Assembly: GCA_002269645.1 (NCBI GenBank)
Contig: NIVC01001009.1
Location: forward strand, 215,402-279,401
Length of the DNA stretch: 64,000 nt
Direction of reading: 5' to 3'
From: Macrostomum lignano
Lineage: Eukaryota
Shown: positions 3,589-50,177 of the stretch, piece by piece
Layout of the letters: each line of letters opens with the position of its first letter
How positions within the stretch are numbered: the first letter of the stretch is position 1
Program-made: the position numbers and the translations under genes
Notes under the pieces: generated by a model
Databases searched by the model: none
Seen by the model: only the letters and a program-made list of their open reading frames with translations
Told to the model about the DNA's origin: nothing

Positions 3589-5104
3589 TTGAAGTTATCA
3601 TTAGCAAGATTTTAGTTAAGCAAACGCAACTTAAAGCTTCAACTACTAACTCCTTATGATTAAGCCTTAATCTTCAGTTAAATAGACGCAATAATGAAAT
3701 GATTTATTTCATTAATTTGTTTTACTGCGATCAAATAGGCCGAAAATGGTCGGCTGGATTTATCGCGCCGTTTTGATTTTGAAAAATTCATTGACGCTTA
3801 TCGCTGAGCCGGGCTCCCGGGCGAGTGGAGAGGCGCTGACGACGAGCTGGAAAAGGGCAGATTTTTTATCTTTATAAATCGAATTGTCCAATGCAAACAG
3901 AACCATAGGGCCAACAGATTGCTCTCTATCTCCGTCTCGTATCAGTCCTAGGACTTCATTTAACAGGCTTAGTAACTTTGCTTTTTTATAATATTCTTTA
4001 TAAAAAGCGATTTTCTAGTCTAATATATGCCCAGTTAAAAGGCTCAATATGGCAGGTTTAATTGCATAGCAAACAACTTTAAAACTGGAGAGAGGGGGGC
4101 GAATGAAATGCCCATATGCCTCCCCAATTAAATCCGCCTTAGCAAAATGGCATCATCAGTCAGTGATTAAAGCTGCACTGGAAAGAAATTATTTGAATTA
4201 GGAAGGCGCCAAAGCCAAGGATTCAAGTTTATCAGTTCGACCCTGGCATTGCGGCTGGCTACAGAAAGGCAGAGAACGGAAATTGTGAAAAAGCGGCATA
4301 CCATCATCCACTATGAAATCCACCCACTTTATGGAATTTAGGACTTATAATGAAGCTTTGCTGTTATGAAAGGGGATGCTTGAGAGGTGAACAGAACCGT
4401 TTTCAAATGATGAAATGTAAAATTTGCGCACAGCTAGCATGCAACACGGACAAAAGCCGCACTTGGCTGTCACATTATTTTGGCAGGAAAACAGAAGTGT
4501 AAACTCTCCGGCCCCAACAGATCCCCAGTCAGTTCTGCAGGGAGCAGGGAGCAAACCAATTTGTTTAACAACACCAACAAAACTAATAAAACTTCTTTGT
4601 TGGCGGCGCCCGGGTCTCTACAAAGGCCGCGGCGGGGGTTGCAATAAAGAAATTCTCGGAGACCAAGGCTAAGAGGACTGATAAGTGTCATTCATCGAAA
4701 TGAACTCAGGCCGAGATTTTGATTCCCACAATTTTCTTGAAAGTTTTCCGCATTTCACTGGTTAATAGCTCACCCCCAACTGTAATAACACGGATTGCCG
4801 AAATTGCACTTCCATCATTCCAATGTCCTCAAGTACCAACACCTGTTCTTCTGGCAAACCTTGGGACCAAAATATCAAACATAATTTCCTCTTCTATCGC
4901 AGGGTTTTTTGTGTTTTTTGCTTTGCTGGTTTGGTCGTGTTTTCTTTTTTACAAGTTTCTGAATAGACAGGATGTAATAGAGGCAAGCAAATAGATGCAT
5001 TGCCGAAATCAGAAACAAAAATTCAGAGTCTGTCAATGCGATACAGATGGAATGAAAAAGATCCATCGTTTCTTTCAGTGTAACAGGCAAAAAGAGAATC
5101 GGAC

Positions 5105-6150
5105 AAGACTGAGGCAGACTATGAGACAGACTGAGGCAGACTATAGGGCAGACTATGAGACAGACTGAGACAGACTATAGGGCAGACTATGAGACAGACT
5201 GAGACAGACTATAGGGCAGACTATGAGACAGACTGAGACAGACTATGAGACAGACTATGAGACAGACTGAGACAGACTATGAGACAGACTATGAGACAGA
5301 CTGAGACAGACTATGAGACAGACTATGAGACAGACTGAGGCAGACTATAGGGCAGACTATGAGACAGACTGAGACAGACTATGAGACAGACTATGAGACA
5401 GACTGAGACAGACTATGAGACAGACTATGAGACAGACTGAGGCAGACTATAGGGCAGACTATGAGACAGACTATGAGACAGACTGAGGCAGACTACAGGG
5501 CAGACAATGAGACAGACTGAGACAGACTATGAGACAGACTATGAGACAGACTATGAGACAGACTATGAGACAGACTATGAGACAGACTGAGGCAGACTAT
5601 AGGGCAGACTATGAGACAGACTATGAGACAGACTGAGGCAGACTATAGGGCAGACTATGAGACAGACTATGAGACAGACTATGAGACAGACTATGAGACA
5701 GACTGAGGCAGACTACAGGGCAGACAATGAGACAGACTATGAGACAGACTATGAGACAGACTATGAGACAGACTATGAGACAGACTATGAGACAGACTAT
5801 GAGACAGACTATGAGACAGACTATGAGACAGACTATGAGACAGACTGAGGCAGACTATAGGGCAGACTATGAGACAGACTATGAGACAGACTGAGGCAGA
5901 CTACAGGGCAGACAATGAGACAGACTGAGACAGACTATGAGACAGACTATGAGACAGACTATGAGACAGACTATGAGACAGACTGAGGCAGACTATAGGG
6001 CAGACTATGAGACAGACTATGAGACAGACTATGAGACAGACTATGAGACAGACTATGAGACAGACTATGAGACAGACTGAGGCAGACTATAGGGCAGACT
6101 ATGAGACAGACTATGAGACAGACTATGAGACAGACTGAGGCAGACTATGA
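5105..6150. repeat. 10/12-bp minisatellite (GAGACAGACTAT with GAGGCAGACTATAGGGCAGACT variants)
   Basis: Tandem array visible in the sequence. Confidence 0.95.
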
Positions 6151-7418
6151 CTGTCTGGCAGACTAGAAGGCAGACTATGAGATGGACTATTAGGCAGAGA
6201 GCAGGAGATATACTATACTAAGAAGAGCCACATGACAGACACCAAGACGGACATTCAGACAGACACTTACTCCATTATTTCATTCGTCGCATTGTTCATT
6301 AAGATTAACTGCTATACAAATGACCATGTTTAGGACTAGCAGAAAAGCGCAAAACAGAAGTTGAGATATTATGAGAGAAATATTCCTACCGTGATCAACT
6401 AATGATGGACAGCGCTTTGAACCGGAGAAAAATGTCCCACATAGCAACGAAAAATTCGAACAAGTATATATTGATATGAGGAATGATGCCAGCAGTTGTA
6501 TTCATTCGTGGCCAGCAAAATGGGACAAAGGGGTCTCAGCGTAGAGATTTGATTCTCTGGTACAATGCGGGCTATCGCATGTCAATTGTCAACTGTTTTT
6601 GTCGACAGGCATGATGTCACATGTGCCCCTGTTTGCCATTCCATCATCGGTGCAGTCTGCCTCTTCACTGTCGAGCTCAGATTCAAAAATAGCCCTTATC
6701 TATATCTATATAGCTTTGATTAAGTCAATAGCCTTGTAAAATGTATGAGCTAGCAATCGCGCAATGTCAAGTTTTAAAACACATTAAATTATACAAGGCT
6801 TATTGCCAGGGGGTGTCGGAGTTATCAGTCCGAAGCAGCAATGGAGAGCTATCGTGTGTCCACCTAGCAACTACCATTGTCTTATTGTAGTATCACTGAT
6901 TGAGGTCAGTGACCACCAATTCATCTGATATACTTGTGGCTTACAAAATTGACTGTATTACAGCAATTACAAAAGTTGCGCAATCCTAGGTCATGCTTTA
7001 CTGGCATAACAACAAAGACCAAGATTGAGTCTGCGGGAGACTGAGGGCTGTGATTGACTACGGGCGCCATTCTCGATTGGCCAATTGAGAATGAAGTGAC
7101 CCCAGCGACTACATGTCATGGTGAGAACCAAGCAATCCAGCATGCGATTTTGAAAATGATTCTCAACAACTTCAAATTGCCTTCGCGCCCTCGAAATCCA
7201 TTGAATTCAATGCCGAGTTCCATCTCAGTAATCCATTGTTAATTTGATTTATTGACTCACCCATCACAATCGATTTTATTTTTAAATTTATTTGGGCAAT
7301 TCAAAATATTTTTCCCTTTATGATGTTTACAGAGATTTTTCGTTTGAGAGAAAAAAGTCCCTCAAATAGATCCTACGCCTTTCTTAAGGTAGCCCTCTCG
7401 TTAACGCACAAAGCAGCA

Positions 7419-8468
7419 CCCCCTAAACAAGCCAGCGCCCCCTAAACAAGACATCTAGCGGTGCCCTAAACAAGACAGCTAGCGCCCCCTAAACAAGACA
7501 GCTAGCGCCCCCCTAAACAAGACAGCTAGCGCCCCCTAAACAAGACAGCTAGCGCCCCCCTAAACAAGACAGCCAGCGCCCCCTAAACAAGACAGCTAGC
7601 GGCCCCCTAAACAAGACAGCTAGCGCCCCCCTAAACAAGACAGCCAGCGCCCCCTAAACAAGACAGCTAGCGCCCCCTAAACAAGACAGCTAGCGCCCCC
7701 CTAAACAAGACAGCTAGCGGCCCCTAAACAAGACAGCTAGCGGCCCCCTAAACAAGACAGCACCCCCTAAACAAGACAGCACCCCCTAAACAAGACAGCT
7801 AGCGCCCCCCTAAACAAGACAGCTAGCGGCCTCCTAAACAAGACAGCACCCCCTAAACAAGGCAGCACCCCCAAAACAAGACAGCACCCCCTAAACAAGA
7901 CAGCTAGCGGCCCCCTAAACAAGACAGCTAGCGCCCCCCTAAACAAGACAGCTAGCGCCCCCCTAAACAAGACAGCTAGCGGCCTCCTAAACAAGACAGC
8001 TAGCGGCCCCCTAAACAAGACAGCTAGCGGCCCCTAAACAAGACAGCACCCCTAAACAAGACAGCACCCCTAAACAAGACAGCTAGCGGCCCCCTAAACA
8101 AGACAGCTAGCGCCCCCCTAAACAAGACAGCTAGCGGCCCCCTAAACAAGACAGCTAGCGCCCCCCTAAACAAGACAGCACCCCCTAAACAAGACAGCAC
8201 CCCCTAAACAAGACAGCTAGCGGCCCCCTAAACAAGACAGCACCCCCTAAACAAGACAGCACCCCCTAAACAAGACAGCTAGCGGCCCCCTAAACAAGAC
8301 AGCTAGCGCCCCCCTAAACAAGACAGCTAGCGCCCCCCTAAACAAGACAGCTAGCGGCCTCCTAAACAAGACAGCACCCCCTAAACAAGGCAGCACCCCC
8401 TAAACAAGACAGCACCGACGAAACAAGACAGCTAGCGGTTACCTAAACAAGCCAGCGCCCCTAAATAA
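7419..8468. repeat. ~20-25-bp minisatellite (CCCCTAAACAAGACAGCTAGCG)
   Basis: Tandem array visible in the sequence. Confidence 0.95.
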
Positions 8469-9111
8469 GATAGTGGCATAGTGCCTTCTAAAATGCCAAG
8501 CTAAGATAAAATTTTACAACGGGTCGAGCATTGGCCCCACTATTAAATCCACCACTGCTCGAACATAGTCGATAATTACGTTAGCATGATAGCCGCTGTA
8601 CAAATAAATCTCTAAAGTGATTAATACCAATTAAGTCAGTCCGGTTGGAATAAAATCCCAATCAAATTTGAGATCCAAAGCAGATCGGTTCAACTTCATG
8701 GCAAACGTTTGGGCCATTGAAAATAAATTAGCATACAGCTCGGGCCAAATGGGCTGTGAGGAGGGGGTCAGGGGAGGCAACTGGTGGTCTGTGTTTGAGC
8801 AGCCCTGCTCAAATAGCATTGATCCAGCGCGCTCTCTATCTACTTATAATAAACGTCTGTCGTCTCTAAATTTAAATGTCATTTGTTGTTTGCTTAGCGA
8901 GCACCCACTTCTGGCTTAATGGGTCGAATTGCATTTACACCATTGGGCATTGGGCTTGAGTTGAGAACGTTACGGATGGCAGAGCTGGCGATGGTGCGAG
9001 CCTCGTTGGAGCTTGTAGCTGGCGAGACATTGAGATTAAGCGATTTCTGTGTATTCCCTTCTTATCTGCCTGTCCTAGCGTCCATCTGACATTTTGAACA
9101 TGTGTGTGTCT

Positions 9112-9297
<186 letters not shown>

Positions 9298-9690
9298 CTC
9301 CTTTGTATGTTGATTTATAGTTCAATTCTGATCGTGCTGCTTAATTTGTATTTTGTAAGTTTCATTAATCAATTTTTTCGAGCATCTGTAGAATTTATGC
9401 AGTCTCCTAAACGTTTAAGTGGGCTTCTTTGGTTCGATGTATTAAAGCTTCTAGCCTAATAATGCTACTAGGAGTAGACTAAATAAAAAATAGGGTAAAA
9501 TTGGTTAATCAAAATTTATTTTATCCTTCATTTGATCGATATGACTGGTGATGTGTTGTGAAAATATTTATTATTCTGTAGGCTGAATCAAGAGTTTGTA
9601 AACTGTATCAAACCTGAAAATATTATTCTTATAATAAATTAAGCGAAAAACAGCAAAAATAGATATTTAGGCTGAAGTAAGTATTCAGGC

Positions 9691-12600
9691 ACTACTATAT
9701 GAACCCGAACGGCGCGATTTTGGAGGTGAGGTGGGTGTCAACCCTCCTCGCCTCTCATTGGCTGGCGCCCCGATCACCAGGCGATCGATACGCGTATCGA
9801 TATCGGCGACTCGAACCCGCGACCCTCCCCAGCCGCAGGCGCACCCACCGATACCAGATCCCAACAAATCAATCAGATCCCAAATCAATCAGATCCCAAA
9901 TCAATCAGATCCCAAGCGCACCCTCCCGAGCCGCAGGCGCCCATGCAGCAGGCGCCCATGCCGCAGGCACCCCGAGTGTACACTCTCCCGATATGTGTGT
10001 ACACCGATATGTAGTCATCGATACGGGCCTCTTCCCCTCTCTCACCTACATCTCAACTAGCGAAATCGAACCCAGGTCGCGCCCATACTAGGACACTACA
10101 CGGTTGTGGGGTATAGGGAGCGAGAAGTTTCAACCCTAACGCTGACGCAGCCCTGTACAGTGAGAGTGTACGGGCAGAGAGGGGTGGGGCGGACAGAGAA
10201 CCAGCCACTAGGTTGTTATACTGTTGAAGCATAGGGAGCGAGAAGTTTTAACCCCGATGCTGACGCAGCCCTGTACACTGAGCGTGTACGGGCAGAGGGT
10301 GGGTGGAAAGAGATGTGAATAACACAGCCTGCTGCAGGAGCCGGATAGAGAGGCGCATGCTAGGACAGAGAGGTAGTGTGAGTCACACACACCCCACAGA
10401 GAAAGCCATACAGAGGATAGAGAGCTCCCTCCCCAGTTGCAGGGGACAGAGGGCAGGCAGGGTATGCAGGGGCATGCGAACCGTCAAGGGGCCACGCGAG
10501 GATAGAGTGGAGGAGCAGAGATGTGTTTGGACAGAGAGCCAGCCACGTGTGCGTAGTGTGAGGGAACAGAAACATATGGAGCAGGAGGGAGATAGGAAGC
10601 AAACGCGCAGGGTAAGGGAGCCATGCAGCAGGGAGCAGTGTACAGTGAGACACGGGCAGGGGTGGAGCCGTGCGTGGACAGAGCTGAACGGCACGGTCAG
10701 CTGCAGGAATAGGATGATAGAGAGGCGCGGAGGGGGACAGAGAGCAGTGTGCAGGGTAGGCAGCCACGCAGGCTGGGGAACAGAGAGGCGCGTGTCAGCC
10801 AGTTACAGCCCGGGACAGAGAAGTATGAAGGGGGCCTGGGACAGAGAAGTATGAAGGGGGCCTGGGACAGAGTTGCGAGCAAGGCACAGAGAGAGGTAGG
10901 GTCCGGTAGCTATGTATAGGCAGGGACCCACGCGAGGGCAGGACAGGGCATGCAAGGCATGCAAATTACATGCAAGGGCAGTGAGGTGTGCGCGGAGGGA
11001 GACAGAGAGCAGTGTGTAGGGGTAGGTAACAGCAAACTTTAGTAGAGGCGCGTGCGGGGACGGAGAAACCAGTCTGAGCGTACAGAGACGTTACAGAGAG
11101 GTACACAAACAGAGACCAAAGCGGGCAGAGCACGTGTAGGGACAGAGACGTGAGGGAGAATAGACCAAAACACGCTATGTATTTTCAAAAGTTGGTTTTA
11201 GTGCAGCATATTTAATAGCGGGTAGTATAATAGTATGTACATAGTAGGTATAATGGTAGTAATAATAGTAAGTATATTAGCCCAAAAGGTAGGCTAAAAC
11301 AGGCTAAACTGTGTGTACGCATCCTCATCACCCCACAAGCCCCCTCTCCCGCCAGACTCACTCTTCCATACCCTCCTGTATTGCTGTATGAAGGAAAATA
11401 TAGTGTAAAAATACAGATCTTAACCGTCAGACCGCTGAAATCAGGGCACACTAGAGGGGTTTCGGGGTCTGCATGCTCTATGTAAGCTGTTTCAATTATG
11501 TTTTGAAAAAACTAGGGGCTTAAATACAACGTTTTATTCAAAAAGTAGGTTATTTTAATGAAATAGCTGACACAATCATTGTCGAGAGTAGAAATTTTTA
11601 TAAGAAACCAGGCATTTTAGCAAAAATAAACCTTCAAACCACATAAAATTGAATAAAAAGCAGACATTTTCAATTATAAACCGCAAGTATTTTAATAGAA
11701 AAGTAAGCAAACAAGGCACAAAACCAGCAAATTTTACCTTTTTATTTTAATGTTACTGATAAGGTAGAGAGTAGAAACTTGTGAGCTGTACGGAGTTAGA
11801 AAGTATTAACCATTATGTATCGTATGAATTATTAGTTCAGTACCAGCCATTGGTCAAGCGAGCATTTATGAAGTTATTACGAGTGATGAAGGGATAGAGA
11901 GCTATATACAGGAAGACAGTATCCTTCTAAACCACCACGAACAGATTGCTAATAGAGATAAGCTTTGTCTGTGTGCAGTATGAGTAAGCGAAGGCGGGGC
12001 AAATACTTTTCCACATGCCGGACAGAACAGTATTGTGCTAGGATTTCTCTCGAAATCACGGTACGTTACTAGTTTTTATCACACCATCCAGATGCGTCAA
12101 CTAGTCAGCAGTAGTCATTTATATGTTATTAGAACTTACAAACCCAGGTCAAGTAAATATTACAAAGAGTATATTACGTACACACGCCAACTCCGAATAC
12201 CAAGCCATACTAGTCTACTTGCAGTGCTCCTGGAGGGAAGGGACGGCGGGGTGTACATCCGGCAGGGTGGGCGTCCAGCGAGTGTACATCTGACAGGATG
12301 GGTGTTCAGCAAGTGTACATCTGACAGGGTGGGCGTTCAGCAAGTGTACCTTCAGCGTCGAGTAGGTGTACACCCGTCAGTGGGGAACTCCACCCCTCCC
12401 ACCAATGTCGTGTGCATGCGGTTAGTCAGTATAGTGGTGGGGTAGACGGTGCAGGAAGGAAACCCAGATGCTGACGCTGCCCTGTACAGCGAGCAACCAG
12501 CCCCCTGTAGCAGGAGGGGGACAGAGAGTGCGTGGAGGCAGTAGGAGATAGAGGACGCTACCCGGCATGTCGCAGCACGCGGCGCGGGACAGAGGCAGTG

Positions 12601-15600
12601 TGTAAGTCACCCCCGCGGAGAGAGCTCCCCTGGCAGGAGGCGCGGGACAGAGAGGCGGTGAATCACACCCCACGGAGAGAGCCGTACAACGAGCTTCCCC
12701 ACCCGAGTCCGGTAAATATTACAGAGTATTACGTGCACACGCCAGCCCTGAATACCAAGCCATACTAGTCTACCTGCAGTGCTCCCAGAGGGAAGGGATG
12801 GTCAGGAGTTACACACCAAGAATGCATTCATACAAAGAGTACACAACTCGAGCCCAGACACCAAGTCACAGTCTACTTACAGTAGAGATGGTAGATTAAT
12901 AGCAAGATTATATTACAATTAGACCTCCCTAGCACATGAGGAGTGAAATTCAATAATAATTGAATTCAATAATAATACAACATTTAGACGTAGTAATTTA
13001 ATTACAAAATACCACTAACACTGAGCCAACGAATTGTAGGTTACAAAGGAGTTGCCACTCATATGGAAAGCCAGTATAATGCAGGTGTGTATTATTAAAA
13101 CATAGACAAAAACGATGCAGACGTATATACACACTATTGATTTTGTACATGTACATTTCGGCATATTACCACACATCGCGGGCACATATTATATATCGGG
13201 GGATAGGTTAAAATACACACATCGTAGATGTAGAAGCAGACACAATGCAGAAAATTATGATACGAGTGTACATATTAGTGCGTAAAAGTATCATATTATG
13301 ACACCCTGTAGCACATATTGACATAATGCAGGGGAAAATATTGACAGAAATAGTACACAATTGTAGAGGTAACAACCAGCCAACTAGTAAGGGCATCCAG
13401 CACTTGTTCAGGTTTTTTTTTATTTCGAGACGAGTGTCATGCCCCCGCAAGAGATCTTATCAGAAATTTGTTGAACTCCACTGCAACTCTCCCCAGAACC
13501 TCCAAATGGGAGTTTTAACACTTGAGGGGATCCCGCTCAGTGTACAGTGCGGACGGAGAGGGGTAACAGAAAGCGCTGCATCAGACCGCGGAGCTGCATT
13601 CCTCCCCCGAGGTAGGCGCGTCAGCTCCCACTCCTCATTTAACCATCAAGTAAACTAAAGAAGTCAAGCAGAAAGCCTTACAATCACCCGCAACCAGCAC
13701 AAGTAAGAGTACTTTCCACTAGAGAGCCATAGTGCAAGATTCGCGAGCCAAGTTGAAGAAGCACACCAAATTACACTAAAGACATATGTATTAAAAAGCA
13801 TACCGGCACCTCTACAAAAACACAGTATGTACCGATTAAAGTTGCTTTTGGTGCAGTGTATTTAATAAAAAGCAGGTACCTAACACAAAAGTAGGCATCA
13901 ATGCAGTGCACGGGCTAAACTGTATTTACAAACGCAGGGCAACGAACTACACACAATGTAGCGCATAGACATAATTGTACACATAAATGTACGCAATCTC
14001 CGGTATATAGGACCAAATGTACGCAAATGTACACAATGCACACAAACACACACACACTCAGGCGCATCCTGCAGCGCATCCTGCAGCACCGATCGCCGCA
14101 GGCGATGGCGCCATCGGCAGGAAGCTCTTGCTGTGAATACGCCTGAGTGTGTGTGTGTTTGTGTACATTGTGTACATTTGCGTACATTTGGTCCTATATA
14201 CCGGAAATTGCGTACATTTATGTGTACAATTATGTCTATGCGCTACATTGTGTGTAGTTCGTTGCCCTGCGTTTGTAAATACAGTTTAGCCCGTGCACTG
14301 CATTGATGCCTACTTTTGTGTTAGGTACCTGCTTTTTATTAAATACACTGCACCAAAAGCAACTTTAATCGGTACATACTGTGTTTTTGTAGAGGTGCCG
14401 GTATGCTTTTTAATACATATGTCTTTAGTGTAATTTGGTGTGCTTCTTCAACTTGGCTCGCGAATCTTGCACTATGGCTCTCTAGTGGAAAGTACTCTTA
14501 CTTGTGCTGGTTGCGGGTGATTGTAAGGCTTTCTGCTTGACTTCTTTAGTTTACTTGATGGTTAAATGAGGAGTGGGAGCTGACGCGCCTACCTCGGGGG
14601 AGGAATGCAGCTCCGCGGTCTGATGCAGCGCTTTCTGTTACCCCTCTCCGTCCGCACTGTACACTGAGCGGGATCCCCTCAAGTGTTAAAACTCCATTTG
14701 GAGGTCTGGGAGAGTTGCAGTGGAGTTCAACAAATTTCTGATAAGATCTCTTGCGGGGGCATGACACTCGTCTCGAAATAAAAAAAACCTGAACAAGTGC
14801 TGGATGCCCTTACTAGTTGGCTGGTTGTTACCTCTACAATTGTGTACTATTTCTGTCAATATTTTCCCCTGCATTATGTCAATATGTGCTACAGGGTGTC
14901 ATAATATGATACTTTTACGCACTAATATGTACACTCGTATCATAATTTTCTGCATTGTGTCTGCTTCTACATCTACGATGTGTGTATTTTAACCTATCCC
15001 CCGATATATAATATGTGCCCGCGATGTGTGGTAATATGCCGAAATGTACATGTACAAAATCAATAGTGTGTATATACGTCTGCATCGTTTTTGTCTATGT
15101 TTTAATAATACACACCTGCATTATACTGGCTTTCCATATGAGTGGCAACTCCTTTGTAACCTACAATTCGTTGGCTCAGTGTTAGTGGTATTTTGTAATT
15201 AAATTACTACGTCTAAATGTTGTATTATTATTGAATTCAATTATTATTGAATTTCACTCCTCATGTGCTAGGAGGTCTAATTGTAATATAATCTTGCTAT
15301 TAATCTACCATCTCTACTGTAAGTAGACTGTGACTTGGTGTCTGGGCTCGAGTTGTGTACTCTTTGTATGAATGCATTCTTGGTGTGTAACTCCTGACCA
15401 TCCCTTCCCTCTGGGAGCACTGCAGGTAGACTAGTATGGCTTGGTATTCAGGGCTGGCGTGTGCACGTAATACTCTGTAATATTTACCGGACTCGGGTGG
15501 GGAAGCTCGTTGTACGGCTCTCTCCGTGGGGTGTGATTCACCGCCTCTCTGTCCCGCGCCTCCTGCCAGGGGAGCTCTCTCCGCGGGGGTGACTTACACA

Positions 15601-18512
15601 CTGCCTCTGTCCCGCGCCGCGTGCTGCGACATGCCGGGTAGCGTCCTCTATCTCCTACTGCCTCCACGCACTCTCTGTCCCCCTCCTGCTACAGGGGGCT
15701 GGTTGCTCGCTGTACAGGGCAGCGTCAGCATCTGGGTTTCCTTCCTGCACCGTCTACCCCACCACTATACTGACTAACCGCATGCACACGACATTGGTGG
15801 GAGGGGTGGAGTTCCCCACTGACGGGTGTACACCTACTCGACGCTGAAGGTACACTTGCTGAACGCCCACCCTGTCAGATGTACACTTGCTGAACACCCA
15901 TCCTGTCAGATGTACACTCGCTGGACGCCCACCCTGCCGGATGTACACCCCGCCGTCCCTTCCCTCCAGGAGCACTGCAAGTAGACTAGTATGGCTTGGT
16001 ATTCGGAGTTGGCGTGTGTACGTAATATACTCTTTGTAATATTTACTTGACCTGGGTTTGTAAGTTCTAATAACATATAAATGACTACTGCTGACTAGTT
16101 GACGCATCTGGATGGTGTGATAAAAACTAGTAACGTACCGTGATTTCGAGAGAAATCCTAGCACAATACTGTTCTGTCCGGCATGTGGAAAAGTATTTGC
16201 CCCGCCTTCGCTTACTCATACTGCACACAGACAAAGCTTATCTCTATTAGCAATCTGTTCGTGGTGGTTTAGAAGGATACTGTCTTCCTGTATATAGCTC
16301 TCTATCCCTTCATCACTCGTAATAACTTCATAAATGCTCGCTTGACCAATGGCTGGTACTGAACTAATAATTCATACGATACATAATGGTTAATACTTTT
16401 TCAACTCCGTACAGCTCACAAGTTTCTACTCTCTACCTTATCAGTAACATTAAAATAAAAAGGTAAAATTTGCTGGTTTTGTGCCTTGTTTGCTTACTTT
16501 TCTATTAAAATACTTGCGGTTTATAATTGAAAATGTCTGCTTTTTATTCAATTTTATGTGGTTTGAAGGTTTATTTTTGCTAAAATGCCTGGTTTCTTAT
16601 AAAAATTTCTACTCTCGACAATGATTGTGTCAGCTATTTCATTAAAATAACCTACTTTTTGAATAAAACGTTGTATTTAAGCCCCTAGTTTTTTCAAAAC
16701 ATAATTGAAACAGCTTACATAGAGCATGCAGACCCCGAAACCCCTCTAGTGTGCCCTGATTTCAGCGGTCTGACGGTTAAGATCTGTATTTTTACACTAT
16801 ATTTTCCTTCATACAGCAATACAGGAGGGTATGGAAGAGTGAGTCTGGCGGGAGAGGGGGCTTGTGGGGTGATGAGGATGCGTACACACAGTTTAGCCTG
16901 TTTTAGCCTACCTTTTGGGCTAATATACTTACTATTATTACTACCATTATACCTACTATGTACATACTATTATACTACCCGCTATTAAATATGCTGCACT
17001 AAAACCAACTTTTGAAAATACATAGCGTGTTTTGGTCTATTCTCCCTCACGTCTCTGTCCCTACACGTGCTCTGCCCGCTTTGGTCTCTGTTTGTGTACC
17101 TCTCTGTAACGTCTCTGTACGCTCAGACTGGTTTCTCCGTCCCCGCACGCGCCTCTACTAAAGTTTGCTGTTACCTACCCCTACACACTGCTCTCTGTCT
17201 CCCTCCGCGCACACCTCACTGCCCTTGTATGTAATTTGCATGCCTTGCATGCCCTGTCCTGCCCTCGCGTGGGTCCCTGCCTATACATAGCTACCGGACC
17301 CTACCTCTCTCTGTGCCTTGCTCGCAACTCTGTCCCAGGCCCCCCTTCATACTTCTCTGTCCCAGGCCCCCCTTCATACTTCTCTGTCCCGGGCTGTAAC
17401 TGGCTGACACGCGCCTCTCTGTTCCCCAGCCTGCGTGGCTGCCTACCCTGCACACTGCTCTCTGTCCCCCTCCGCGCCTCTCTATCATCCTATTCCTGCA
17501 GCTGACCGTGCCGTTCAGCTCTGTCCACGCACGGCTCCACCCCTGCCCGTGTCTCACTGTACACTGCTCCCTGCTGCATGGCTCCCTTACCCTGCGCGTT
17601 TGCTTCCTATCTCCCTCCTGCTCCATATGTTTCTGTTCCCTCACACTACGCACACGTGGCTGGCTCTCTGTCCAAACACATCTCTGCTCCTCCACTCTAT
17701 CCTCGCGTGGCCCCTTGACGGTTCGCATGCCCCTGCATACCCTGCCTGCCCCTCTGTCCCCTGCAACTGGGGAGGGAGCTCTCTATCCTCTGTATGGCTT
17801 TCTCTGTGGGGTGTGTGTGACTCACACTACCTCTCTGTCCTAGCATGCGCCTCTCTATCCGGCTCCTGCAGCAGGCTGTGTTATTCACATCTCTTTCCAC
17901 CCACCCTCTGCCCGTACACGCTCAGTGTACAGGGCTGCGTCAGCATCGGGGTTAAAACTTCTCGCTCCCTATGCTTCAACAGTATAACAACCTAGTGGCT
18001 GGTTCTCTGTCCGCCCCACCCCTCTCTGCCCGTACACTCTCACTGTACAGGGCTGCGTCAGCGTTAGGGTTGAAACTTCTCGCTCCCTATACCCCACAAC
18101 CGTGTAGTGTCCTAGTATGGGCGCGACCTGGGTTCGATTTCGCTAGTTGAGATGTAGGTGAGAGAGGGGAAGAGGCCCGTATCGATGACTACATATCGGT
18201 GTACACACATATCGGGAGAGTGTACACTCGGGGTGCCTGCGGCATGGGCGCCTGCTGCATGGGCGCCTGCGGCTCGGGAGGGTGCGCTTGGGATCTGATT
18301 GATTTGGGATCTGATTGATTTGGGATCTGATTGATTTATTGGGATCTAATATCGGTAGGTGCGCCTGCGGCTGGGGAGGGTCGCGGGTTCGAGTCGCCGA
18401 TATCGATACGCGTATCGATCACCTAGTGATCGGGGCGCCAGCCAATGAGAGGCGAGGAGGGTTGACACCCACCTCACCTCCAAAATCGCGCCATTCGGGT
18501 TCATATAGTAGT
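9691..18512. mobile_element. 8.8-kb fold-back (palindromic) inserted element with 6-bp TSD; no intact enzyme ORF seen
   Basis: 9691-14064 is the reverse complement of 14140-18512 (mirrored ORFs in the track are identical, e.g. 12035-12445 vs 15754-16164). Ends are ACTACTATAT...ATATAGTAGT; TCAGGC lies at 9685-9690 and 18513-18518; unique AT-rich flanks on both sides. Confidence 0.9.
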
Positions 18513-18674
18513 TCAGGCTTAGAGCCAAGCCTCTCTAATAAGTTATATTTATTATACAGAAGCCTGGGCAACCCAAAGAGAAACTTATATCATTATAAAA
18601 TAGTGTGTAGTCCAAAACACATATGCACAGTTGCAACAGAACAGAAGTTATTTCGAACAATAAATTTTCTTAAT

Positions 18675-19553
18675 TTATTTACTCTTCTCTCCGGTGTACA
18701 ATTGCTTCGTTGCGTTTCGTAGCTTCCGGATGTCCTTGGAGAACTCTTGCTCCTTTAGTAGCTCATCGTGCTGAATTTCCAGCTTCCTTTTGTGCTCTTG
18801 GAGCAGCCTTGTCTGCTGAATCATGTGCAGTAAATCTTTACGAAGCTTTCTATTCTGCAGCTTGACGGTGTTCGAATGATCTATGAGAGACGTGATAGCC
18901 TCCTTGTATGCTTCCTTGGAAAGCTGGTGAACTTTCTGTTCGGATTCCTCTTGAAACTCTCGCTTTTCGCGCATGAATTTTGCCTTGAGCTGCTGCAGCT
19001 GCTCAGAATGCTGAATTCTCAAGTTCTGGGCCTCTTTCTCCAAATGCTTGATCATTTCAGCTTGCTCATCCTTAAGCTTTTTGAACTCAGCAAGTTCATC
19101 CAACTCGTCGCGCGCTTTTGACAGTTCATTTTGCTTCGAAAGTAGTGTCTGTTTTAATTCTTCCTTCTGGTAACTGTACGCTTCAAGCATCTCTTCTCGC
19201 TGTTGTAGCAAAACCTTGATTTCGTGCTCGTTATAGTCGCTGAGCGTAATCAATGCCTTCTGTCTCTTGTCGGCGCGTTTCTCCATGTAGCCCATGTATT
19301 CATGACTTTCAACTCGAATTCGCTGAGACTCTTCCTGGAGCCATTCGTTTTCACTCTTCAATTCCGAAAGCTTCTTTTTAGCATCTTCAACTTCTTTGAT
19401 AACTTTTGCCAATTCTTCTTTTAACTGCTGCTCTTTGTCAACGACTTCCTCTTGCGGCTGTTCTACTTCGGGTGCCACGGATTCATCAGCTTTCTTGGCG
19501 CTCTTATCTTTTCCTTTGCTTTTTCCTTTCTTTTTTCCTTTCTTTGGTGGCAT
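18675..19553 (-). CDS. CCDC166: Coiled-coil domain-containing protein 166 (DUF4515/BBOF1 family), intronless
   Basis: 292-aa ORF with MPPKKGKK start; ENEWLQEESQRIRVESHEYMGYM, EHSEQLQQLKAKFMREK-type and NRKLRKDLLHMIQQT segments align by eye to CCDC166; AATAAA on the minus strand at 18674-18679 and 18548-18553. Confidence 0.82.
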   Translation of the reverse strand: MPPKKGKKKGKSKGKDKSAKKADESVAPEVEQPQEEVVDKEQQLKEELAKVIKEVEDAKKKLSELKSENEWLQEESQRIRVESHEYMGYMEKRADKRQKALITLSDYNEHEIKVLLQQREEMLEAYSYQKEELKQTLLSKQNELSKARDELDELAEFKKLKDEQAEMIKHLEKEAQNLRIQHSEQLQQLKAKFMREKREFQEESEQKVHQLSKEAYKEAITSLIDHSNTVKLQNRKLRKDLLHMIQQTRLLQEHKRKLEIQHDELLKEQEFSKDIRKLRNATKQLYTGEKSK

Positions 19554-26516: not shown

Positions 26517-26674
26517 CTCCAGAGTTTAGGAAATCAATGGGAAACTGTTGACGCGGGCTTCTGATTTCAAAGATCTTGTCTGTGGTTGAAGGCTTCTATT
26601 CTGTTTTTGCTCTCCTGCCACACTTGCACCTACTACCCCCTGATTGCCTCTAATTGTGACTTACTTCCCTCTTA

Positions 26675-27345
26675 TTGCGACTTAGTTGCTTCTTTTTGCG
26701 ACTTACCTAATCCTTTTTGCGACTTACTTAATCCTTTTTGCAACTTACATAATCCTTTTGCGACTTACCTAACCCTTTTACGACTTACCTAATCCTTTTT
26801 GCGACTTACTTAATCCTTTTTGCGACTTACTTAATCCTTTTGCGACTTACCTAACCCTTTGTGACTTACCTAATCCTTTTTGCGACTTACCTAATCCTTT
26901 TTGCGACTTACTTAATCCTTTTTTCGACTTAGCTGATCCTTTTGCGACTTACCTAACCCTTTTGCGACTTACTTAATCCTTTTTGCGACTTACCTAATCC
27001 TTTTTGCGACTTACCTAACCCTTTGTGACTTACCTAACCCTTTTGCGACTTACTTAATCCTTTTTGCGACTTACCTAATCCTTTTTGCGACTTACCTAAC
27101 CCTTTGTGACTTACCTAATCCTTTTTGCGACTTACCTAATCCTTTTTGCGACTTACCTAATCCTTTTTGCGACTTACCTAACCCTTTTGCGACTTACCTA
27201 ATCCTTTTTGCGACTTACCTAACCCTTTTGTGACTTACCTGATCCTTTTTGCGACTTAGTTTGCTTCTTTTGCGACTTACCTGATCCTTTTTGCGACTTA
27301 CCTGATTATTTTTACAACTTAGTTTGCTTCTTTTGCGAATTTTTT
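26675..27345. repeat. 22-24-bp tandem array (TGCGACTTACCTAATCCTTTT) inside the hAT element
   Basis: Roughly 30 units, each carrying the element's subterminal TGCGACTTA motif. Confidence 0.9.
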
Positions 27346-29839: not shown

Positions 29840-44638
<14,799 letters not shown>

Positions 44639-45990: not shown

Positions 45991-46729
45991 CTAGAAAGCT
46001 TATGTTTATTTAACTGACAGTTGTACTAATCTCGCAGAGGGTATGTGTTTATCTGGCTACCAGATTCGTGTGTTTACCACCCTCTCGAGCTGGTTTATTT
46101 AGCAGACCTTGCTAAACTTATATTCTTTTGATGTTTTCATTGACCAGTTCTTTTTGATTAATTTGTACTCGTATTTGAGCAGATTGTTTACAAGAGAACT
46201 AGCCAGATAATTATTTAAACCGATAGTCGTATTTTGCGTGTTTCATATCAGTTTCGTCATATTTGTACAATATCTTGCATGCTCTGCTGTACACCACAGT
46301 AGCTCCTGTTCATTAAATCTCATATATAATCCTTTTTGTTGTCTGTCTCAAAGTTTGTCGTATGCACTATTCATTTATTATTTAATAAATGATTAGCATG
46401 CAGCCGCAACCTACTCAATCACTACTCATGGGACCTACGATCTTTACTTTTCAATTTTTATTTGGGTTCCAATGATAGTTTTGTATTGATTTTTAAGCCG
46501 TAATTCAGATAAATTTTTCAATCTAAAATCTCTCTACCTGCCGATTTTGCTTATGTATATAATTATATATTTCTGCGCCTTTCAAATGTTGAATAAGCTG
46601 ATTTACTAAAAATAAATGCAATCATAATATTGTTAAACTTTTCGTTTTACTTTTGTTGTCTTTGTATCGATTCTTTGTACTTTCCTGGTTACATTTCTTA
46701 CATGGGAGATTTTGATTACTATATAAGTC

Positions 46730-48190
46730 ATTCCTTCCCTTCCCAGGCCCTTCATTCAATTCATCCTTTCCCAGACTCCCAGACCCTTCATTCTGTCCCT
46801 TCCCAGACCATTCCCTACCTCCCCAGACCCTTCCTTCGGTCTTTTCCCAGACCCTTCATTCCTTCCCCTCCCAGACCCTTCATTCCTAGCCCTCCCAGAC
46901 CCTTCATTCCTTCCCCTCCCAGACCCTTCATCCCTTGCCCTCCCAGACCCTTCATTCCTTGCCCTTTCAGACCCTTCATTCCTTGCCCTTTCAGACCCTT
47001 CATTCCTTCCCCTCCCAGACCCTTCATTCCTTCCCCTCCCAGACCCTTCATCCCTTGCCCTCCCAGACCCTTCATTCCTTGCCCTTTCAGACCCTTCATT
47101 CCTTCCCCTCCCAGACCCTTTATTCCTTGCCCTCCCAGACCCTTCATTCCTTCCCCTTCCAGACCCTTCATTCCTTCCCCTCCCAGACCTTTATTCCTTG
47201 CCCTCCCAGACCCTTCATTCCTTCCCCTCCCAGACCCTTCATTCCTTCCCCTCCCAGACCCTTTATTCCTTCCCCTCCCAGACCCTTCATTCCTAGCACT
47301 CCCAGACCCTTCATTCCTTCCCCTCCCAGACCCTTCATTCCTTGCCCTCTCAGACCCTTCATTCTGTCCCTTCCCAGACCATTCCCTACCTCCCCAGGCC
47401 CTTCCTTCTGTCTTTTCCCAGACCCTTCATTCCTTGCCCTCCCAGACCCTTCATTATTTCCCCTCCCAGACCCTTCATTCGTTCCCCTCCCAGACCCTTC
47501 ATTCCTTGCCCTCCCAGACCCTTCATTCCTTGCCCTCCCAGACCCTTCATTATTTCCCCTCCCAGACCCTTCATTCCTAGCCCTCCCAGACCCTTCATTC
47601 CTTCCCCTCCCAGACCCTTCATTCCTTGCCCTCTCAGACCCTTCATTCTGTCCCTTCCCAGACCATTCCCTACCTCCCCAGACCCTTCCTTCTGTCTTTT
47701 CCCAGACCCTTTATTCCTTCCCTTCCCAGACCCTTCATTCCTTGCCCTTTCAGACCCTTCATTCCTTCCCCTCCCAGACCCTTCATTCCTTGCCCTCCCA
47801 GACTCTTCATTCCTTCCCCTCCCAGACCCTTCATTCCTTACCCCCCAACCCTTCATTCCTTCCCCTTCCAGACCCTTCATTCCTTGCCCTCTCAGACCCT
47901 TCATTCCTTGCCCTCCCAGACTCTTCATTCCTTCCCCTCCCAGACCCTTCATTCCTTACCCCCCAACCCTTCATTCCTTCCCCTAACAAACCCTTCATTC
48001 CTTCCCCTAACAGACCCTTCATTCCTTCCCCTCTCAGACCCTTCATTCCTTCCCCGCCCAGACCCTTCATTCCTTGTCCTCCCAGACCTTTCATTTCTCT
48101 CTTTTCAGAAGCCTTTATTCCGTCCCTTCCCAAACCCTTCATTTCTTGCCCTCCCAGACCCTTCATTCCCTAACTCCACAGACCCTTCAT
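46730..48190. repeat. ~21-bp pyrimidine-rich minisatellite (CCCAGACCCTTCATTCCTTCC)
   Basis: Tandem array; Pro-rich ORFs 46630-48285 are by-products. Confidence 0.95.
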
Positions 48191-48699
48191 TTTGTTTTTC
48201 CCTACATCTCTGCTATGCTCTAGTCCCCAGATCTTTCCGCACAAAAGTGCATCAAGTGAACAGATCTTCACGGCTACAGGCTTGAGAAATTTGATTGATA
48301 AAACTCGATGAGTCATTACAATACAGGCCAGTGCAGGAATACTGCCGTCTGCTGCTTCTCTCTATTCCGCAGCCTATGCAAGGCCCTAAGGTAGAGTAGA
48401 CTGCCAGCCTGTGATTTTATCGTAAACAGCGATTTCGCTATGCTATCTGCGGCAGAAATACGCGCAGCTGATGAATTGAATAAAATGCTTTATTAGCTAA
48501 AATGGTTATAAAATGTATTCATTATTTAGATTGACATGTTAAGAAGTCAAAAAAATTTTGGATTTGACTAAAAGTTATATTCCTACATGTATTTAGTCTT
48601 AGGGGTAGTTAATTCTATTTTCACGTTATATTGTGCTGCAAACATTGTTACTGTTAGTAGCGTCAGTTAAGCAAAAATATATATAAGATGATCTGTCTA

Positions 48700-49930
48700 G
48701 CGCCTAGATAATTTCTATCCCCTAGATCACCAATCTATCCTCTATATCATTAATATATCCCCTAGATCTTTGATCTAACCCTCTAGATCATCAATATATC
48801 CTCTAGATCTTTGATCTATCCCCCTAGATCTTTGATCTAACCCTCTAGATCATCAATATATCCTCTAGATCTTTGATCTATCCCCCTAGATCATTCATCT
48901 ATCCCCTAGATCTTTGATCTAACCCCCTAGAGCATCAATCTATCCACCGGATCTTTGATCTAACCCCCTAGAGCATCAATCTATCCACCGGATCTTTGAT
49001 CTAACCCCCTGGATCATCAATATATCCCTTAGATCTTTAATCTATCCCCCTAGATTATTTATTAATCTACCCCCTAGATCACCAATATATCCCCCTAGAT
49101 CACCAATATATCCCCTAGATCTTTGATCTATTCCCCTGGATAATCAATCTATCCTCTAGATCATCAATATATCCCCAAGATCTTATCTTTGATCTATCCC
49201 CCTTGAGCATCAATCTTTCCCCCAGGATCATCGAACTATCCCATAGATCATCGTACTATCCCATAGATCATCAATCTATTCTCTAGACCATCAGTCAATT
49301 CCCTAGACTATCGATTTTTCCCCGAGATCTTTAATCCATTCCCTAAATCATCAATCTATTCCCTAGACTATCAATCTATCCCCTAGAGCATCAATCTATT
49401 CCCTAGACTATCAATCTACCCCCTAGATCATCAGTCAATTCCCTAGACTATCAATCTATCCCCTAGATTATCAGTCAATTCCCTAGACTATCAATCTATC
49501 CCCTAGATTATCAGTCAATTCCCTAGACTATCAATCTATCCCCTAGATCATCAGTCTATTCCCTAGACTATCAATCTATCCCCTAGATTATCAGTCAATT
49601 CCCTAGACTATCAATCTATCCCCTAGATCATCAGTCAATTCCCTAGACTATCAATCTATCCCCTAGATCATCAGTCAATTCCCTAGACTATCAATCTATC
49701 CCCTAGATCATCAGTCTATTCCCTAGACTATCAATCTATCCCCTAGATCATCAGTCAATTCCCTAGACTATCAATCTATCCCCTAGATCATCAGTCAATT
49801 CCCTAGACTATCAATCTATCCCCTAGATCATCAGTCAATTCCCTAGACTATCAATCTATCCCCTAGATCACCAGTCAATTCCCTAGACTATCAATCTATC
49901 CCCTAGATCATCAGTCAATTCCCTAGACTA
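48700..49930. repeat. 20/21-bp minisatellite homogenising into a 41-bp dimer (TCAGTCAATTCCCTAGACTATCAATCTATCCCCTAGATCA)
   Basis: Divergent monomers on the left, homogeneous dimers from ~49430. Confidence 0.93.
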
Positions 49931-50177
49931 TCAATCTATCCCCTAGATCTACCCGAGACTTTCAAAATCTGCAATTGTCAATACTGTATGGTATTCTCAT
50001 TTGCCTTTAACAGATGAAAATGCTCAATTAGTTTAAGTTTTAAGCAATAAATAACGGCTGAAAAACACTGTTTCGCTTCGTTTCATGAGAACCCCGGCTT
50101 GGCAACAAATCAGCGAGCCTCGCTGATCCACCTCATCTGCTTATTGGGATAATCATCCCCATAGCAACACGCGAGTT

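What the first reader, a model, noticed from the sequence alone, without database searches (positions are those of the whole stretch)
9685..18518. 8.8-kb self-complementary (fold-back) insertion with a 6-bp TSD and no recognisable transposase
Seen: the whole element is one hairpin, with arms 9691-14064 and 14140-18512 (~4.37 kb each; in the stretches I compared only ~20 differences, many 1-bp homopolymer indels) around a 75-bp tip. It is bounded by a direct 6-bp duplication (TCAGGC) with unrelated unique flanks, the signature of a discrete integration event. Known: MITE/TIR arms are usually tens to hundreds of bp; Drosophila FB/Galileo and Mutator-type foldbacks have 7-9+ bp TSDs. Inference: this may be an unclassified mobile unit that is mobilised, or was created, as a full-length snap-back DNA molecule.
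Basis: partly seen in the sequence, partly recalled or inferred. Interest (0 to 1): 0.9.

Follow-up and report, generated by a model that had tools for sequence, protein, structure and literature searches.

The report
Flatworm 8.8-kb palindromic transposon-like insertion
A real, recent insertion of an 8.8-kb non-coding, almost perfectly self-complementary DNA element sits inside a gene of the flatworm Macrostomum lignano; a duplicated copy of the locus still shows the empty site, but no second copy could be reached, so whether it belongs to a mobile family is untested.

Summary
Window 9691-18512 is one palindrome. Its arms are 9691-14064 and 14140-18512, 4.37 kb each, with 11 substitutions and 9 one-base homopolymer indels between them. 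The loop is 75 nt. TCAGGC flanks the element directly on both sides.

The window is Macrostomum lignano, assembly Mlig_3_7. A collinear duplicated locus on another contig, about 94% identical, reads ...GTAAGTAT-TCAGTC-TTAGAGCC... with no insert. This is therefore a discrete integration with a 6-bp target-site duplication, not a fold-back read artefact.

The arms encode nothing recognisable. Nothing similar was found in any collection I could reach, none of which holds a flatworm genome. Family membership, copy number and the snap-back origin are therefore untested.

My best reading is a non-autonomous foldback-type (very long TIR) DNA element. Its 6-bp duplication fits none of the characterised foldback lineages (Mutator-like 8-10 bp, Galileo/P 7 bp).

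Two further points:
- TCAGGC also lies 1 bp from the inner end of each arm.
- All arm-to-arm substitutions are transitions with G/C in the left arm and A/T in the right, clustered at the arm edges.

The element lies in an annotated intron, so it should be transcribed into a 4.4-kb RNA hairpin. Interest is moderate.

The parts
9685..9690 (.). Left copy of the 6-bp target-site duplication, TCAGGC
   Evidence: Read directly. The single copy in the empty duplicated locus reads TCAGTC.
9691..14064 (+). Left arm, the 'half-element E', starting ACTACTATATGAACCCGAA. Non-coding.
   Evidence: No Pfam hit and no protein homologue. No inverted repeat longer than 18 nt within the arm.
14065..14139 (.). Asymmetric 75-nt loop (tip). 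It contains a 12-nt x2.2 tandem repeat and small internal stems.
   Evidence: No SMRTbell adapter. No similarity to the flanks, the rest of the window or L001.
14140..18512 (-). Right arm, the reverse complement of the left arm
18513..18518 (.). Right copy of the target-site duplication, TCAGGC
14058..14063 (+). Inner TCAGGC, 1 bp from the inner end of the left arm (mirror GCCTGA at 14141-14146). The half-element 9691-14057 is thus flanked by TCAGGC on both sides.
   Evidence: These are the only occurrences of the hexamer, in either orientation, inside the element. The window as a whole holds 27 occurrences in 128,000 strand positions.
9865..9972 (+). Subterminal short tandem repeats: 16 bp x3.2 at 9865-9915 and 15 bp x2.7 at 9933-9972. 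Mirrored at 18231-18337.
10190..12653 (+). Nine dispersed copies of GGGACAGAG(A), all in one orientation in each arm. Absent from the other 55 kb of the window. Mirrored in the right arm.
9710..9865 (.). Outer cluster of 7 arm-to-arm transitions: left arm C, right arm (18338-18493, arm sense) T
   Evidence: P about 1e-7 for 7 of 12 falling in 175 of 4377 bp.
18675..19553 (-). Host gene coding exon (DUF4515 coiled-coil protein, Mlig001659g2). Its stop codon lies 156 bp from the insertion.
3847..18682 (-). Annotated GT-AG intron of the host gene isoform. It contains the whole palindrome. The terminal exon is at 3788-3846.

Best explanation
The feature is a genuine, evolutionarily recent insertion of a pre-formed, non-coding, foldback-type DNA element. 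Each 'terminal inverted repeat' is 4.37 kb, and the two are separated by only 75 nt. It sits in the 3' region or last intron of a DUF4515 gene of Macrostomum lignano.

Shown:
- The palindrome itself.
- Exact inverted termini, ACTACT.../...AGTAGT.
- The 6-bp duplication of the target, and the empty site in the duplicated locus.
- The absence of any coding capacity.

Inferred:
- The two identical outer ends were joined to 6-bp staggered cuts by a transposase or integrase supplied in trans, so the element is non-autonomous.
- The palindrome was made earlier from a 4.37-kb half-element. A hairpin formed at one end, by fold-back priming or template switching about 75 nt beyond that end. Copying then gave a dimer with two identical 'left' ends.
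- TCAGGC at the inner end of the arm is then the old flanking duplication of that half-element. This would mean the family prefers TCAGGC-like targets.
- Because the element lies inside a transcription unit, it should be transcribed into a 4.4-kb perfect RNA hairpin. Its likely present-day effect is as a source of double-stranded RNA, a substrate for RNA interference or editing, rather than as a gene.
For: - Palindrome and boundaries.
- Empty site with a single TCAGTC in the collinear, about 94% identical locus L001.
- Both TSD copies are identical to each other and differ from the homeologous site by one base, as expected if this lineage's own hexamer was duplicated.
- Arm divergence is about 0.25% against about 6% between the duplicated loci, so the insertion is younger than the duplication.
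- No ORF longer than 190 aa, no Pfam domain, no homologue.
- Subterminal tandem repeats and nine one-orientation GGGACAGAG motifs per arm, absent from the rest of the window. This is a layout typical of transposase-binding subterminal regions.
- The inner TCAGGC is the only other occurrence in the element and lies 1 bp from the arm end. Chance expectation is about 0.1-0.5%.
- No adapter at the tip and no vector, phage or plasmid similarity.
- The element lies inside an annotated GT-AG intron.
Against: - Only one copy is known. No relative was found, although no searchable collection contains flatworm genomes.
- No transposase partner is identified.
- The 6-bp TSD and AC...GT termini fit no superfamily I could test. 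Mutator-like foldback elements give 8-10 bp. IS3EU/GingerRoot have TA..TA termini. Polinton termini are AG..CT by my recollection.
- The half-element has no inverted repeat of its own. How it would have transposed before becoming a palindrome is therefore unexplained.
- A strict 6-bp target preference is unusual.
- The one-arm, one-direction transitions are not predicted by simple cut-and-paste.
Confidence: 0.5

Rival explanations
1. A one-off insertion, not a transposon family. A linear single-stranded DNA or cDNA copy of some 4.4-kb sequence was captured at a 6-bp staggered break. It became palindromic during integration. This could happen by snap-back self-priming of the first strand. It could also happen if both target 3' ends primed on the same template end (twin-priming-like), followed by an end-to-end template jump that left the 75-nt loop.
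For: - A single copy is all that is seen.
- The half-element has no TIR of its own and no coding capacity.
- All 11-12 substitutions are transitions with C/G in one arm and T/A in the other. Ten of them are C/T on the same strand, and they cluster in the first 175 nt and the last about 70 nt of the arm. This looks like cytosine deamination, or A-to-I editing of a template, on a single-stranded intermediate affecting one arm only.
- The asymmetric loop and the 0-1 nt microhomology at the arm/loop boundary resemble a template jump.
Against: - There is no poly(A) or microsatellite tail at the outer ends beyond (ACT)2.
- The cleanly symmetric termini abutting a fixed-length duplication are more typical of a transposase or integrase.
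- The subterminal repeat layout looks transposon-like.
- The mechanism has no direct precedent that I could cite for a complete 4.4-kb palindrome.
- The transitions may be a polishing artefact (see the full report).
Confidence: 0.22
2. A two-step origin in place. A simple 4.37-kb element E first inserted here with a TCAGGC duplication. E plus its right-hand TCAGGC was later duplicated in inverted orientation at the same locus, by alternative or sister-chromatid transposition or by fold-back repair.
For: E (9691-14057) is flanked by TCAGGC on both sides, exactly like a simple insertion with its TSD.
Against: - The sequence after the inner TCAGGC (GCATCCTGCAGC...) is not the right flank of this locus (TTAGAGCC...), and it matches nothing in the window or L001.
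- The right arm abuts TCAGGC in the direct, not the mirrored, orientation. A local inverted duplication would not give this.
- Both flanks remain collinear with the homeologue.
Confidence: 0.08
3. An assembly artefact. The palindrome, or its interior, was created by chimeric fold-back PacBio reads (missed SMRTbell adapter) or by Canu mis-joining. The true insert would be shorter or have a unique core.
For: - The assembly is built from PacBio RS II reads with Canu 1.4 and polished only with Pilon (PMC5730564).
- The nine homopolymer indels between the arms show that the interior was never properly polished.
- No independent assembly or read set could be inspected.
Against: - There is no adapter sequence at the centre.
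- A fold-back chimera would mirror the left flank. Here the right flank continues the locus, as shown by collinearity with L001 and the exact TSD and empty-site relationship.
- A reproducible centre with a specific 75-nt loop cannot come from random shear points.
Confidence: 0.05

Closest known systems
Foldback (FB-like) transposons of the Mutator lineage: Drosophila FB, Tetris (D. virilis), Tm1 (Meloidogyne)
   Same: Very long composite inverted repeats containing short tandem repeats. Little or no middle domain. No coding capacity in most copies. Flanked by a target-site duplication. Mobilised in trans (PMC4079207, PMC3169594).
   Different: Their duplications are 8-10 bp, mostly 9, against 6 bp here. 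Their TIRs are dominated by long tandem arrays and average about 93% identity in Tm1. Here the arms are mostly unique sequence, 4.37 kb long and about 99.7% identical. No family or transposase is known here.
Galileo (P superfamily foldback-like element of Drosophila)
   Same: Shows that foldback architecture arises independently by TIR elongation. Long, internally repetitive TIRs with extra transposase-binding sites (PMC3573991, PMC3688188, PMC4079207).
   Different: Galileo makes 7-bp duplications (my recollection of Marzo et al. 2008). Its TIRs reach about 1.2 kb, and autonomous copies encode a P-like THAP transposase. None of this is seen here.
6-bp-TSD elements using retroviral-type integrases or IS3-like transposases: Polinton/Maverick, IS3EU/GingerRoot
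   Same: The characteristic 6-bp target-site duplication (PMC10045372). They have TIRs. Polinton TIRs can be hundreds of bp.
   Different: IS3EU/GingerRoot termini are TA..TA, occasionally TG..CA (PMC10045372). Polinton termini are AG..CT (my recollection). Here the termini are AC..GT. No integrase, polymerase or capsid remnants are present.
Mu killer of maize and animal hairpin-RNA (hpRNA) loci
   Same: An inverted duplication of transposon-derived sequence, placed so that host transcription reads through it and produces a long hairpin RNA. This comparison rests on my own knowledge. Here the palindrome lies in an annotated intron.
   Different: No small-RNA or expression data were available. 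No target family is known. Any silencing function is purely inferred.

Membership tests
Foldback elements (structural class) | Long inverted repeats making up most of the element, with a short or absent non-coding middle domain | tested here: met
   Arms of 4374 nt each, loop of 75 nt, no coding capacity.
Foldback elements (structural class) | TIRs built largely of tandem subrepeats | tested here: inconclusive
   Only short arrays are present: 16 bp x3.2, 15 bp x2.7, 26 bp x2.5, 31 bp x3.2, plus nine dispersed GGGACAGAG motifs. Most of each arm is unique sequence.
Foldback elements (structural class) | A repeated family, with several copies at different sites each having its own TSD | not testable with these tools
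   No flatworm genomic DNA collection is available. There are no other copies in the window, L001 or L002, and none in the viral, metagenome, GTDB, plasmid or phage collections.
Mutator-like foldback (FB, Tm1, Tetris) | 8-10 bp target-site duplication | tested here: not met
   The duplication is 6 bp at most, and 4-5 bp if the end bases are assigned to the element. Reference values come from PMC3169594 and PMC4079207.
Galileo / P superfamily | 7-8 bp target-site duplication and a P-like THAP transposase in autonomous copies | tested here: not met
   6-bp TSD. No transposase remnant. The reference values are from my own knowledge.
Polinton/Maverick | 6-bp TSD | tested here: met
   PMC10045372 gives 6 bp for Polinton.
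Polinton/Maverick | 5'-AG...CT-3' termini, and integrase, protein-primed polymerase and capsid genes or their remnants | tested here: not met
   The termini are AC...GT. No protein similarity of any kind. The terminus rule is from my own knowledge.
IS3EU / GingerRoot | 6-bp TSD with TA..TA (occasionally TG..CA) termini | tested here: not met
   The TSD length fits, but the termini are AC..GT. The rule is from PMC10045372.
CACTA / Mirage / Chapaev | CACTA-type termini with a 2-4 bp TSD | tested here: inconclusive
   If the last base of the left TSD is given to the element, the left end reads CACTAC. The right end then reads ...GTAGTT, not ...GTAGTG. A 4-bp (CAGG) reading needs two chance coincidences. 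This comes from reading directly.
PacBio fold-back chimera (missed adapter) | Adapter remnant at the centre of symmetry, with mirrored flanks | tested here: not met
   No adapter similarity, score 10 against a shuffled background of about 18. The flanks are collinear with the homeologue.
Fold-back inversion from break repair | An inverted duplication that continues into mirrored chromosomal sequence, with no TSD | tested here: not met
   The palindrome ends exactly at the two TSD copies, and both flanks keep their normal order and orientation.

The most novel reading that the evidence does not exclude
A class of mobile DNA that is generated and/or moves as a full-length hairpin (snap-back) molecule and integrates site-preferentially at TCAGGC with a 6-bp duplication. 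The half-element would be the real unit, and the palindrome its replicated hairpin form. The one-arm, strand-coordinated transition clusters at the outer end and near the loop would then be the deamination or editing scars of the single-stranded parts of that intermediate.
Probability: 0.1. Interest if true: 0.75.

Novelty: new variant of a known kind. Interest (0 to 1): 0.4.

Why it matters
If a family exists, it would be a foldback-type element with a 6-bp duplication. That falls outside the Mutator-like and P-like lineages to which foldback elements have been assigned, in a phylum whose DNA transposons are little described.

A perfect 4.4-kb-stem palindrome that has survived in a genome, inside a transcribed gene, is also a natural test case for two things:
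- Palindrome stability.
- Hairpin-RNA production (RNA interference, piRNA or A-to-I editing) in a flatworm model that can be grown and made transgenic.

There is a practical point for users of Mlig_3_7. The interior of such repeats is unpolished (homopolymer errors). RNA-seq was used for polishing, so single-base differences there should not be taken at face value.

Tried and rejected
- **Other copies in the window, L001 or the extra part of L002:** none, by blastn with word sizes 7-11 and by a terminal 19-mer with up to 3 mismatches.
- **Terminal 24-mer scans:** 0 hits in the viral, metagenome and GTDB genome collections. This was expected, because none holds flatworm DNA.
- **Copies through protein space:**
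  - Exact look-up of seven arm ORFs: not in the collection.
  - A concatenate of all 30 ORFs of 60 aa or more (2794 aa) against 5.8 billion proteins: no hit.
  - Pfam at E<=1: only a 0.12 noise hit.
- **Rfam:** nothing at gathering thresholds. At E<=1 only a sub-threshold 'mir-3149' match (45 bits against a gathering score of 100). This is just the (CA)n/(TG)n stem at the tip. No tRNAs.
- **Vector or contaminant origin:** no plasmid or phage similarity.
- **SMRTbell adapter at the tip:** rejected.
- **Tip as a relic of a terminal region:** local alignment is not above the shuffled background.
- **An inverted repeat within one arm, which would make the half-element an ordinary TIR element:** none longer than 18 nt.
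- **Other foldback-like structures in the window:** only microsatellite-derived inverted repeats.
- **Literature on Macrostomum foldback elements, palindromes or ADAR:** nothing relevant.
- **'Old diverged TIR edges plus gene conversion' as the sole cause of the edge clusters:** rejected. It predicts differences in both directions, but all go one way.
Full report
**1. The observation**

Window 9691-18512 is a single palindrome. The repeat finder reports six consecutive ungapped blocks of 384-1129 nt at 99-100% complementarity. A gapped blastn of the left half against the reverse complement of the right half gives 99.4% identity over 4401 columns.

Position by position, the arms are 9691-14064 and 14140-18512. 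They differ by 11 substitutions and 9 one-base indels, and all the indels lie in homopolymer runs. The loop is 75 nt, or 69 nt if G[C/T]AT is counted as arm.

The arms end outward exactly at ACTACTATATG... and ...CATATAGTAGT. Each is abutted by TCAGGC (9685-9690 and 18513-18518). Beyond that the flanks are unrelated to each other.

**2. Where the window comes from, and the empty site**

ORFs in the window encode a BACK+Kelch protein, a Ras-family GTPase and a DUF4515 coiled-coil protein. Exact look-up placed two of these proteins in Macrostomum lignano, assembly GCA_002269645.1 (Mlig_3_7), on the 382-kb contig NIVC01001009.1.

The DUF4515 protein has a 98%-identical paralogue on contig NIVC01000077.1. 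I fetched 21 kb around it as L001. L001 is collinear with the window over its whole length at 87-96% identity. This is expected for a neopolyploid genome with 180 Mb of duplicated blocks (PMC5730564).

At the position of the element, L001 reads ...GGCTGAAGTAAGTAT-TCAGTC-TTAGAGCCAAGCCTCTC.... The left flank, one hexamer and the right flank follow each other with nothing between. In the window that hexamer is present twice, as TCAGGC both times.

This is the classical filled-site/empty-site pair. It establishes a discrete integration with a duplication of up to 6 bp. The sequence alone cannot exclude 4-5 bp if the terminal bases of the element happen to equal the adjacent target bases, but 6 bp is the parsimonious reading.

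The flanks differ by about 6% between the two loci, and the arms by about 0.25%. The insertion, or the last homogenisation of the arms, is therefore much younger than the duplication.

**3. Is it an artefact?**

Mlig_3_7 was built from PacBio RS II reads with Canu 1.4. It was polished only with Pilon, using Illumina DNA and RNA-seq (PMC5730564). A missed-adapter fold-back read would leave adapter sequence at the centre and would mirror the left flank. Neither is seen:
- The tip has no similarity to the SMRTbell adapter.
- The right flank continues the locus.

The nine homopolymer indels all lie at least 556 bp from any unique anchor (flank or loop). That is what one expects of residual PacBio consensus errors in a stretch where short reads multi-map and Pilon cannot act. 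I treat them as errors rather than as divergence. I could not inspect reads, so confirmation by spanning reads remains a next step.

**4. Content of the element**

- No ORF exceeds 190 aa.
- The ten longest ORFs have no Pfam domain.
- All 30 stop-to-stop ORFs of 60 aa or more, concatenated, have no homologue among 5.8 billion proteins.
- There is no Rfam family at gathering score and no tRNA. The only relaxed match is a sub-threshold miRNA model hitting the (CA)n stem at the tip.
- A single arm has no inverted repeat of its own.
- The arms carry short subterminal tandem repeats. They also carry nine copies of GGGACAGAG(A), all in one orientation, and this motif is absent from the remaining 55 kb of the window. 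The layout resembles the subterminal binding-site arrays of many DNA transposons.
- Nothing similar exists elsewhere in the window, in L001, or in the phage, plasmid, viral, metagenome and prokaryotic genome collections. None of those collections contains flatworm DNA. The copy number in M. lignano is therefore simply unknown.

**5.

(a) *An inner TCAGGC.* TCAGGC occurs inside the element only at 14058-14063, 1 bp from the inner end of the left arm. Its mirror GCCTGA is at 14141-14146. The 4367-bp half-element is thus flanked by the target hexamer on both sides, like a simple insertion with its TSD. From the hexamer's frequency in the window, the chance of this is about 0.1-0.5%.

The sequence following the inner copy (GCATCCTGCAGC...) is not this locus's right flank and matches nothing available. 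A local, in-place duplication is therefore unlikely. The simplest reading runs as follows:
- The half-element once sat elsewhere as a simple insertion flanked by TCAGGC.
- A break about 75 nt into its flank folded back and copied it into a hairpin dimer.
- The dimer, now with two identical ends, inserted here, again at TCAGGC.

This requires a target preference. It is testable only with other copies.

(b) *One-directional transitions.* Every substitution between the arms is a transition, with G/C in the left arm and A/T at the mirror position in the right arm. Counting position 14065, that is 12 of 12 (two-sided P = 5e-4). Ten of them are C/T on the same strand.

They cluster. Seven lie within 175 bp of the outer end (P about 1e-7) and three within 70 bp of the loop (P about 8e-4). 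Divergence of old TIR edges with gene conversion of the interior would explain the clustering but not the direction.

Two explanations remain:

- *RNA editing written into the assembly.* The palindrome lies in an annotated GT-AG intron of Mlig001659g2. The donor is at 18682, the acceptor at 3847, and the terminal exon encodes ...TRRQRLSTRPGARLSDKRQ. The pre-mRNA therefore forms a 4.4-kb perfect duplex, an ideal ADAR substrate, and RNA-seq was used for polishing. Read as A-to-G, the changes have 5' neighbours U7, A2, C2, G0. This is the ADAR preference as I recall it, but the numbers are small. In the outer cluster G is the commonest background neighbour (13 of 38) and is absent from the 7 sites, P about 0.05. 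That all changes sit in one arm would need a deterministic tie-break for multi-mapping reads, which I did not verify. Against this reading, no edits are seen in the sense strand of the same region.
- *Real strand-coordinated C-to-T damage.* This would be damage to one arm while its ends were single-stranded, during formation or integration of a hairpin or linear intermediate.

Raw DNA reads would settle this at once.

**6. What it is**

By structure it is a foldback-type element: very long inverted repeats, almost no middle domain, non-coding and TSD-flanked. [quoted passage not shown]

Membership of the known foldback lineages fails on TSD length:
- Mutator-like FB, Tm1 and Tetris make 8-10 bp duplications (PMC3169594, PMC4079207).
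- Galileo makes 7 bp (my recollection).

The superfamilies with 6-bp duplications fail on the termini and on the absence of any gene remnant:
- IS3EU/GingerRoot have TA..TA termini (PMC10045372).
- Polinton termini are AG..CT (TSD length from PMC10045372, terminus rule from my recollection).
- Here the termini are AC..GT.

A CACTA-like reading of the left end (C|ACTAC) is not mirrored at the right end. I therefore file the element as an unclassified foldback-type insertion.

My estimates are:

| Reading | Probability |
|---|---|
| Non-autonomous member of a transposon family mobilised in trans | 0.5 |
| One-off capture of a snap-back DNA or cDNA at a staggered break | about 0.2 |
| Two-step origin in place | about 0.1 |
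| Assembly artefact | about 0.05 |

**7. Verdict**

The feature is real and the integration is proven. The reading 'mobile family moved as a snap-back molecule' is not excluded, but it rests on one copy. Long loop-less inverted repeats are what foldback elements are, so the structure alone is not categorically new. What is unusual:
- The 6-bp duplication.
- The 4.4-kb, mostly non-repetitive, near-identical arms.
- The inner copy of the target hexamer.
- The directional edge mutations.

Interest is moderate (0.4). The decisive tests are cheap: BLASTN against the flatworm assemblies and inspection of the raw reads.

Noticed in passing
window 9710-9865 and 13998-14065, against 18338-18493 and 14139-14206: All 12 arm-to-arm substitutions are transitions with G/C in the left arm and A/T in the right. 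Ten are C/T on one strand, and they cluster at the outer end and next to the loop. They are either ADAR-type editing copied into the assembly by RNA-seq-based Pilon polishing, or a real one-arm deamination cluster.
   Followed up: partly
window 14058-14063 and 14141-14146: The target hexamer TCAGGC recurs 1 bp from the inner end of each arm. The 4.37-kb half-element is therefore flanked by it on both sides. It occurs nowhere else in the element.
   Followed up: partly
window 3788-3846 and 18682-19553, minus strand: The annotated isoform Mlig001659g2 (309 aa) splices from a GT donor that overlaps the normal stop region to an exon 14.8 kb downstream, across the whole palindrome. The uninterrupted paralogue (L001) is annotated as a single exon with the normal ...GEKSK stop. 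I did not check whether the insertion changed 3'-end processing.
   Followed up: partly
window 10451, 10830, 10856, 11798, 12927, 13413, 13494, 13498, 13508: Nine 1-bp homopolymer length differences between the arms, all in the interior where short reads multi-map. They are most likely unpolished PacBio consensus errors in Mlig_3_7.
   Followed up: partly
window 9111-9297: A (TCTG)n microsatellite of about 47 units lies 400 bp upstream of the insertion. Similar 4-nt arrays at about 31.2-31.6 kb and 39.7-39.9 kb account for all the other long 'inverted repeats' in the window.
   Followed up: no
window 46600-50000: A region with extreme GC skew (-0.6) and overlapping ORFs of 200-410 aa. One gives a weak Cornifin/SPRR (proline-rich repeat) hit. 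It is probably a tandem-repeat array or a repetitive coding exon.
   Followed up: no
window 7400-8470 and 26650-27340, against L001: Tandem-repeat arrays whose copy number differs between the window and the duplicated locus L001. They appear as many staggered blastn alignments.
   Followed up: no
window 42822-43865 and 59107-59688: Long uninterrupted ORFs for a BACK+Kelch (KLHL-like) protein fragment and a 193-aa Ras-family GTPase. The Ras protein is present on two contigs of the assembly.
   Followed up: no
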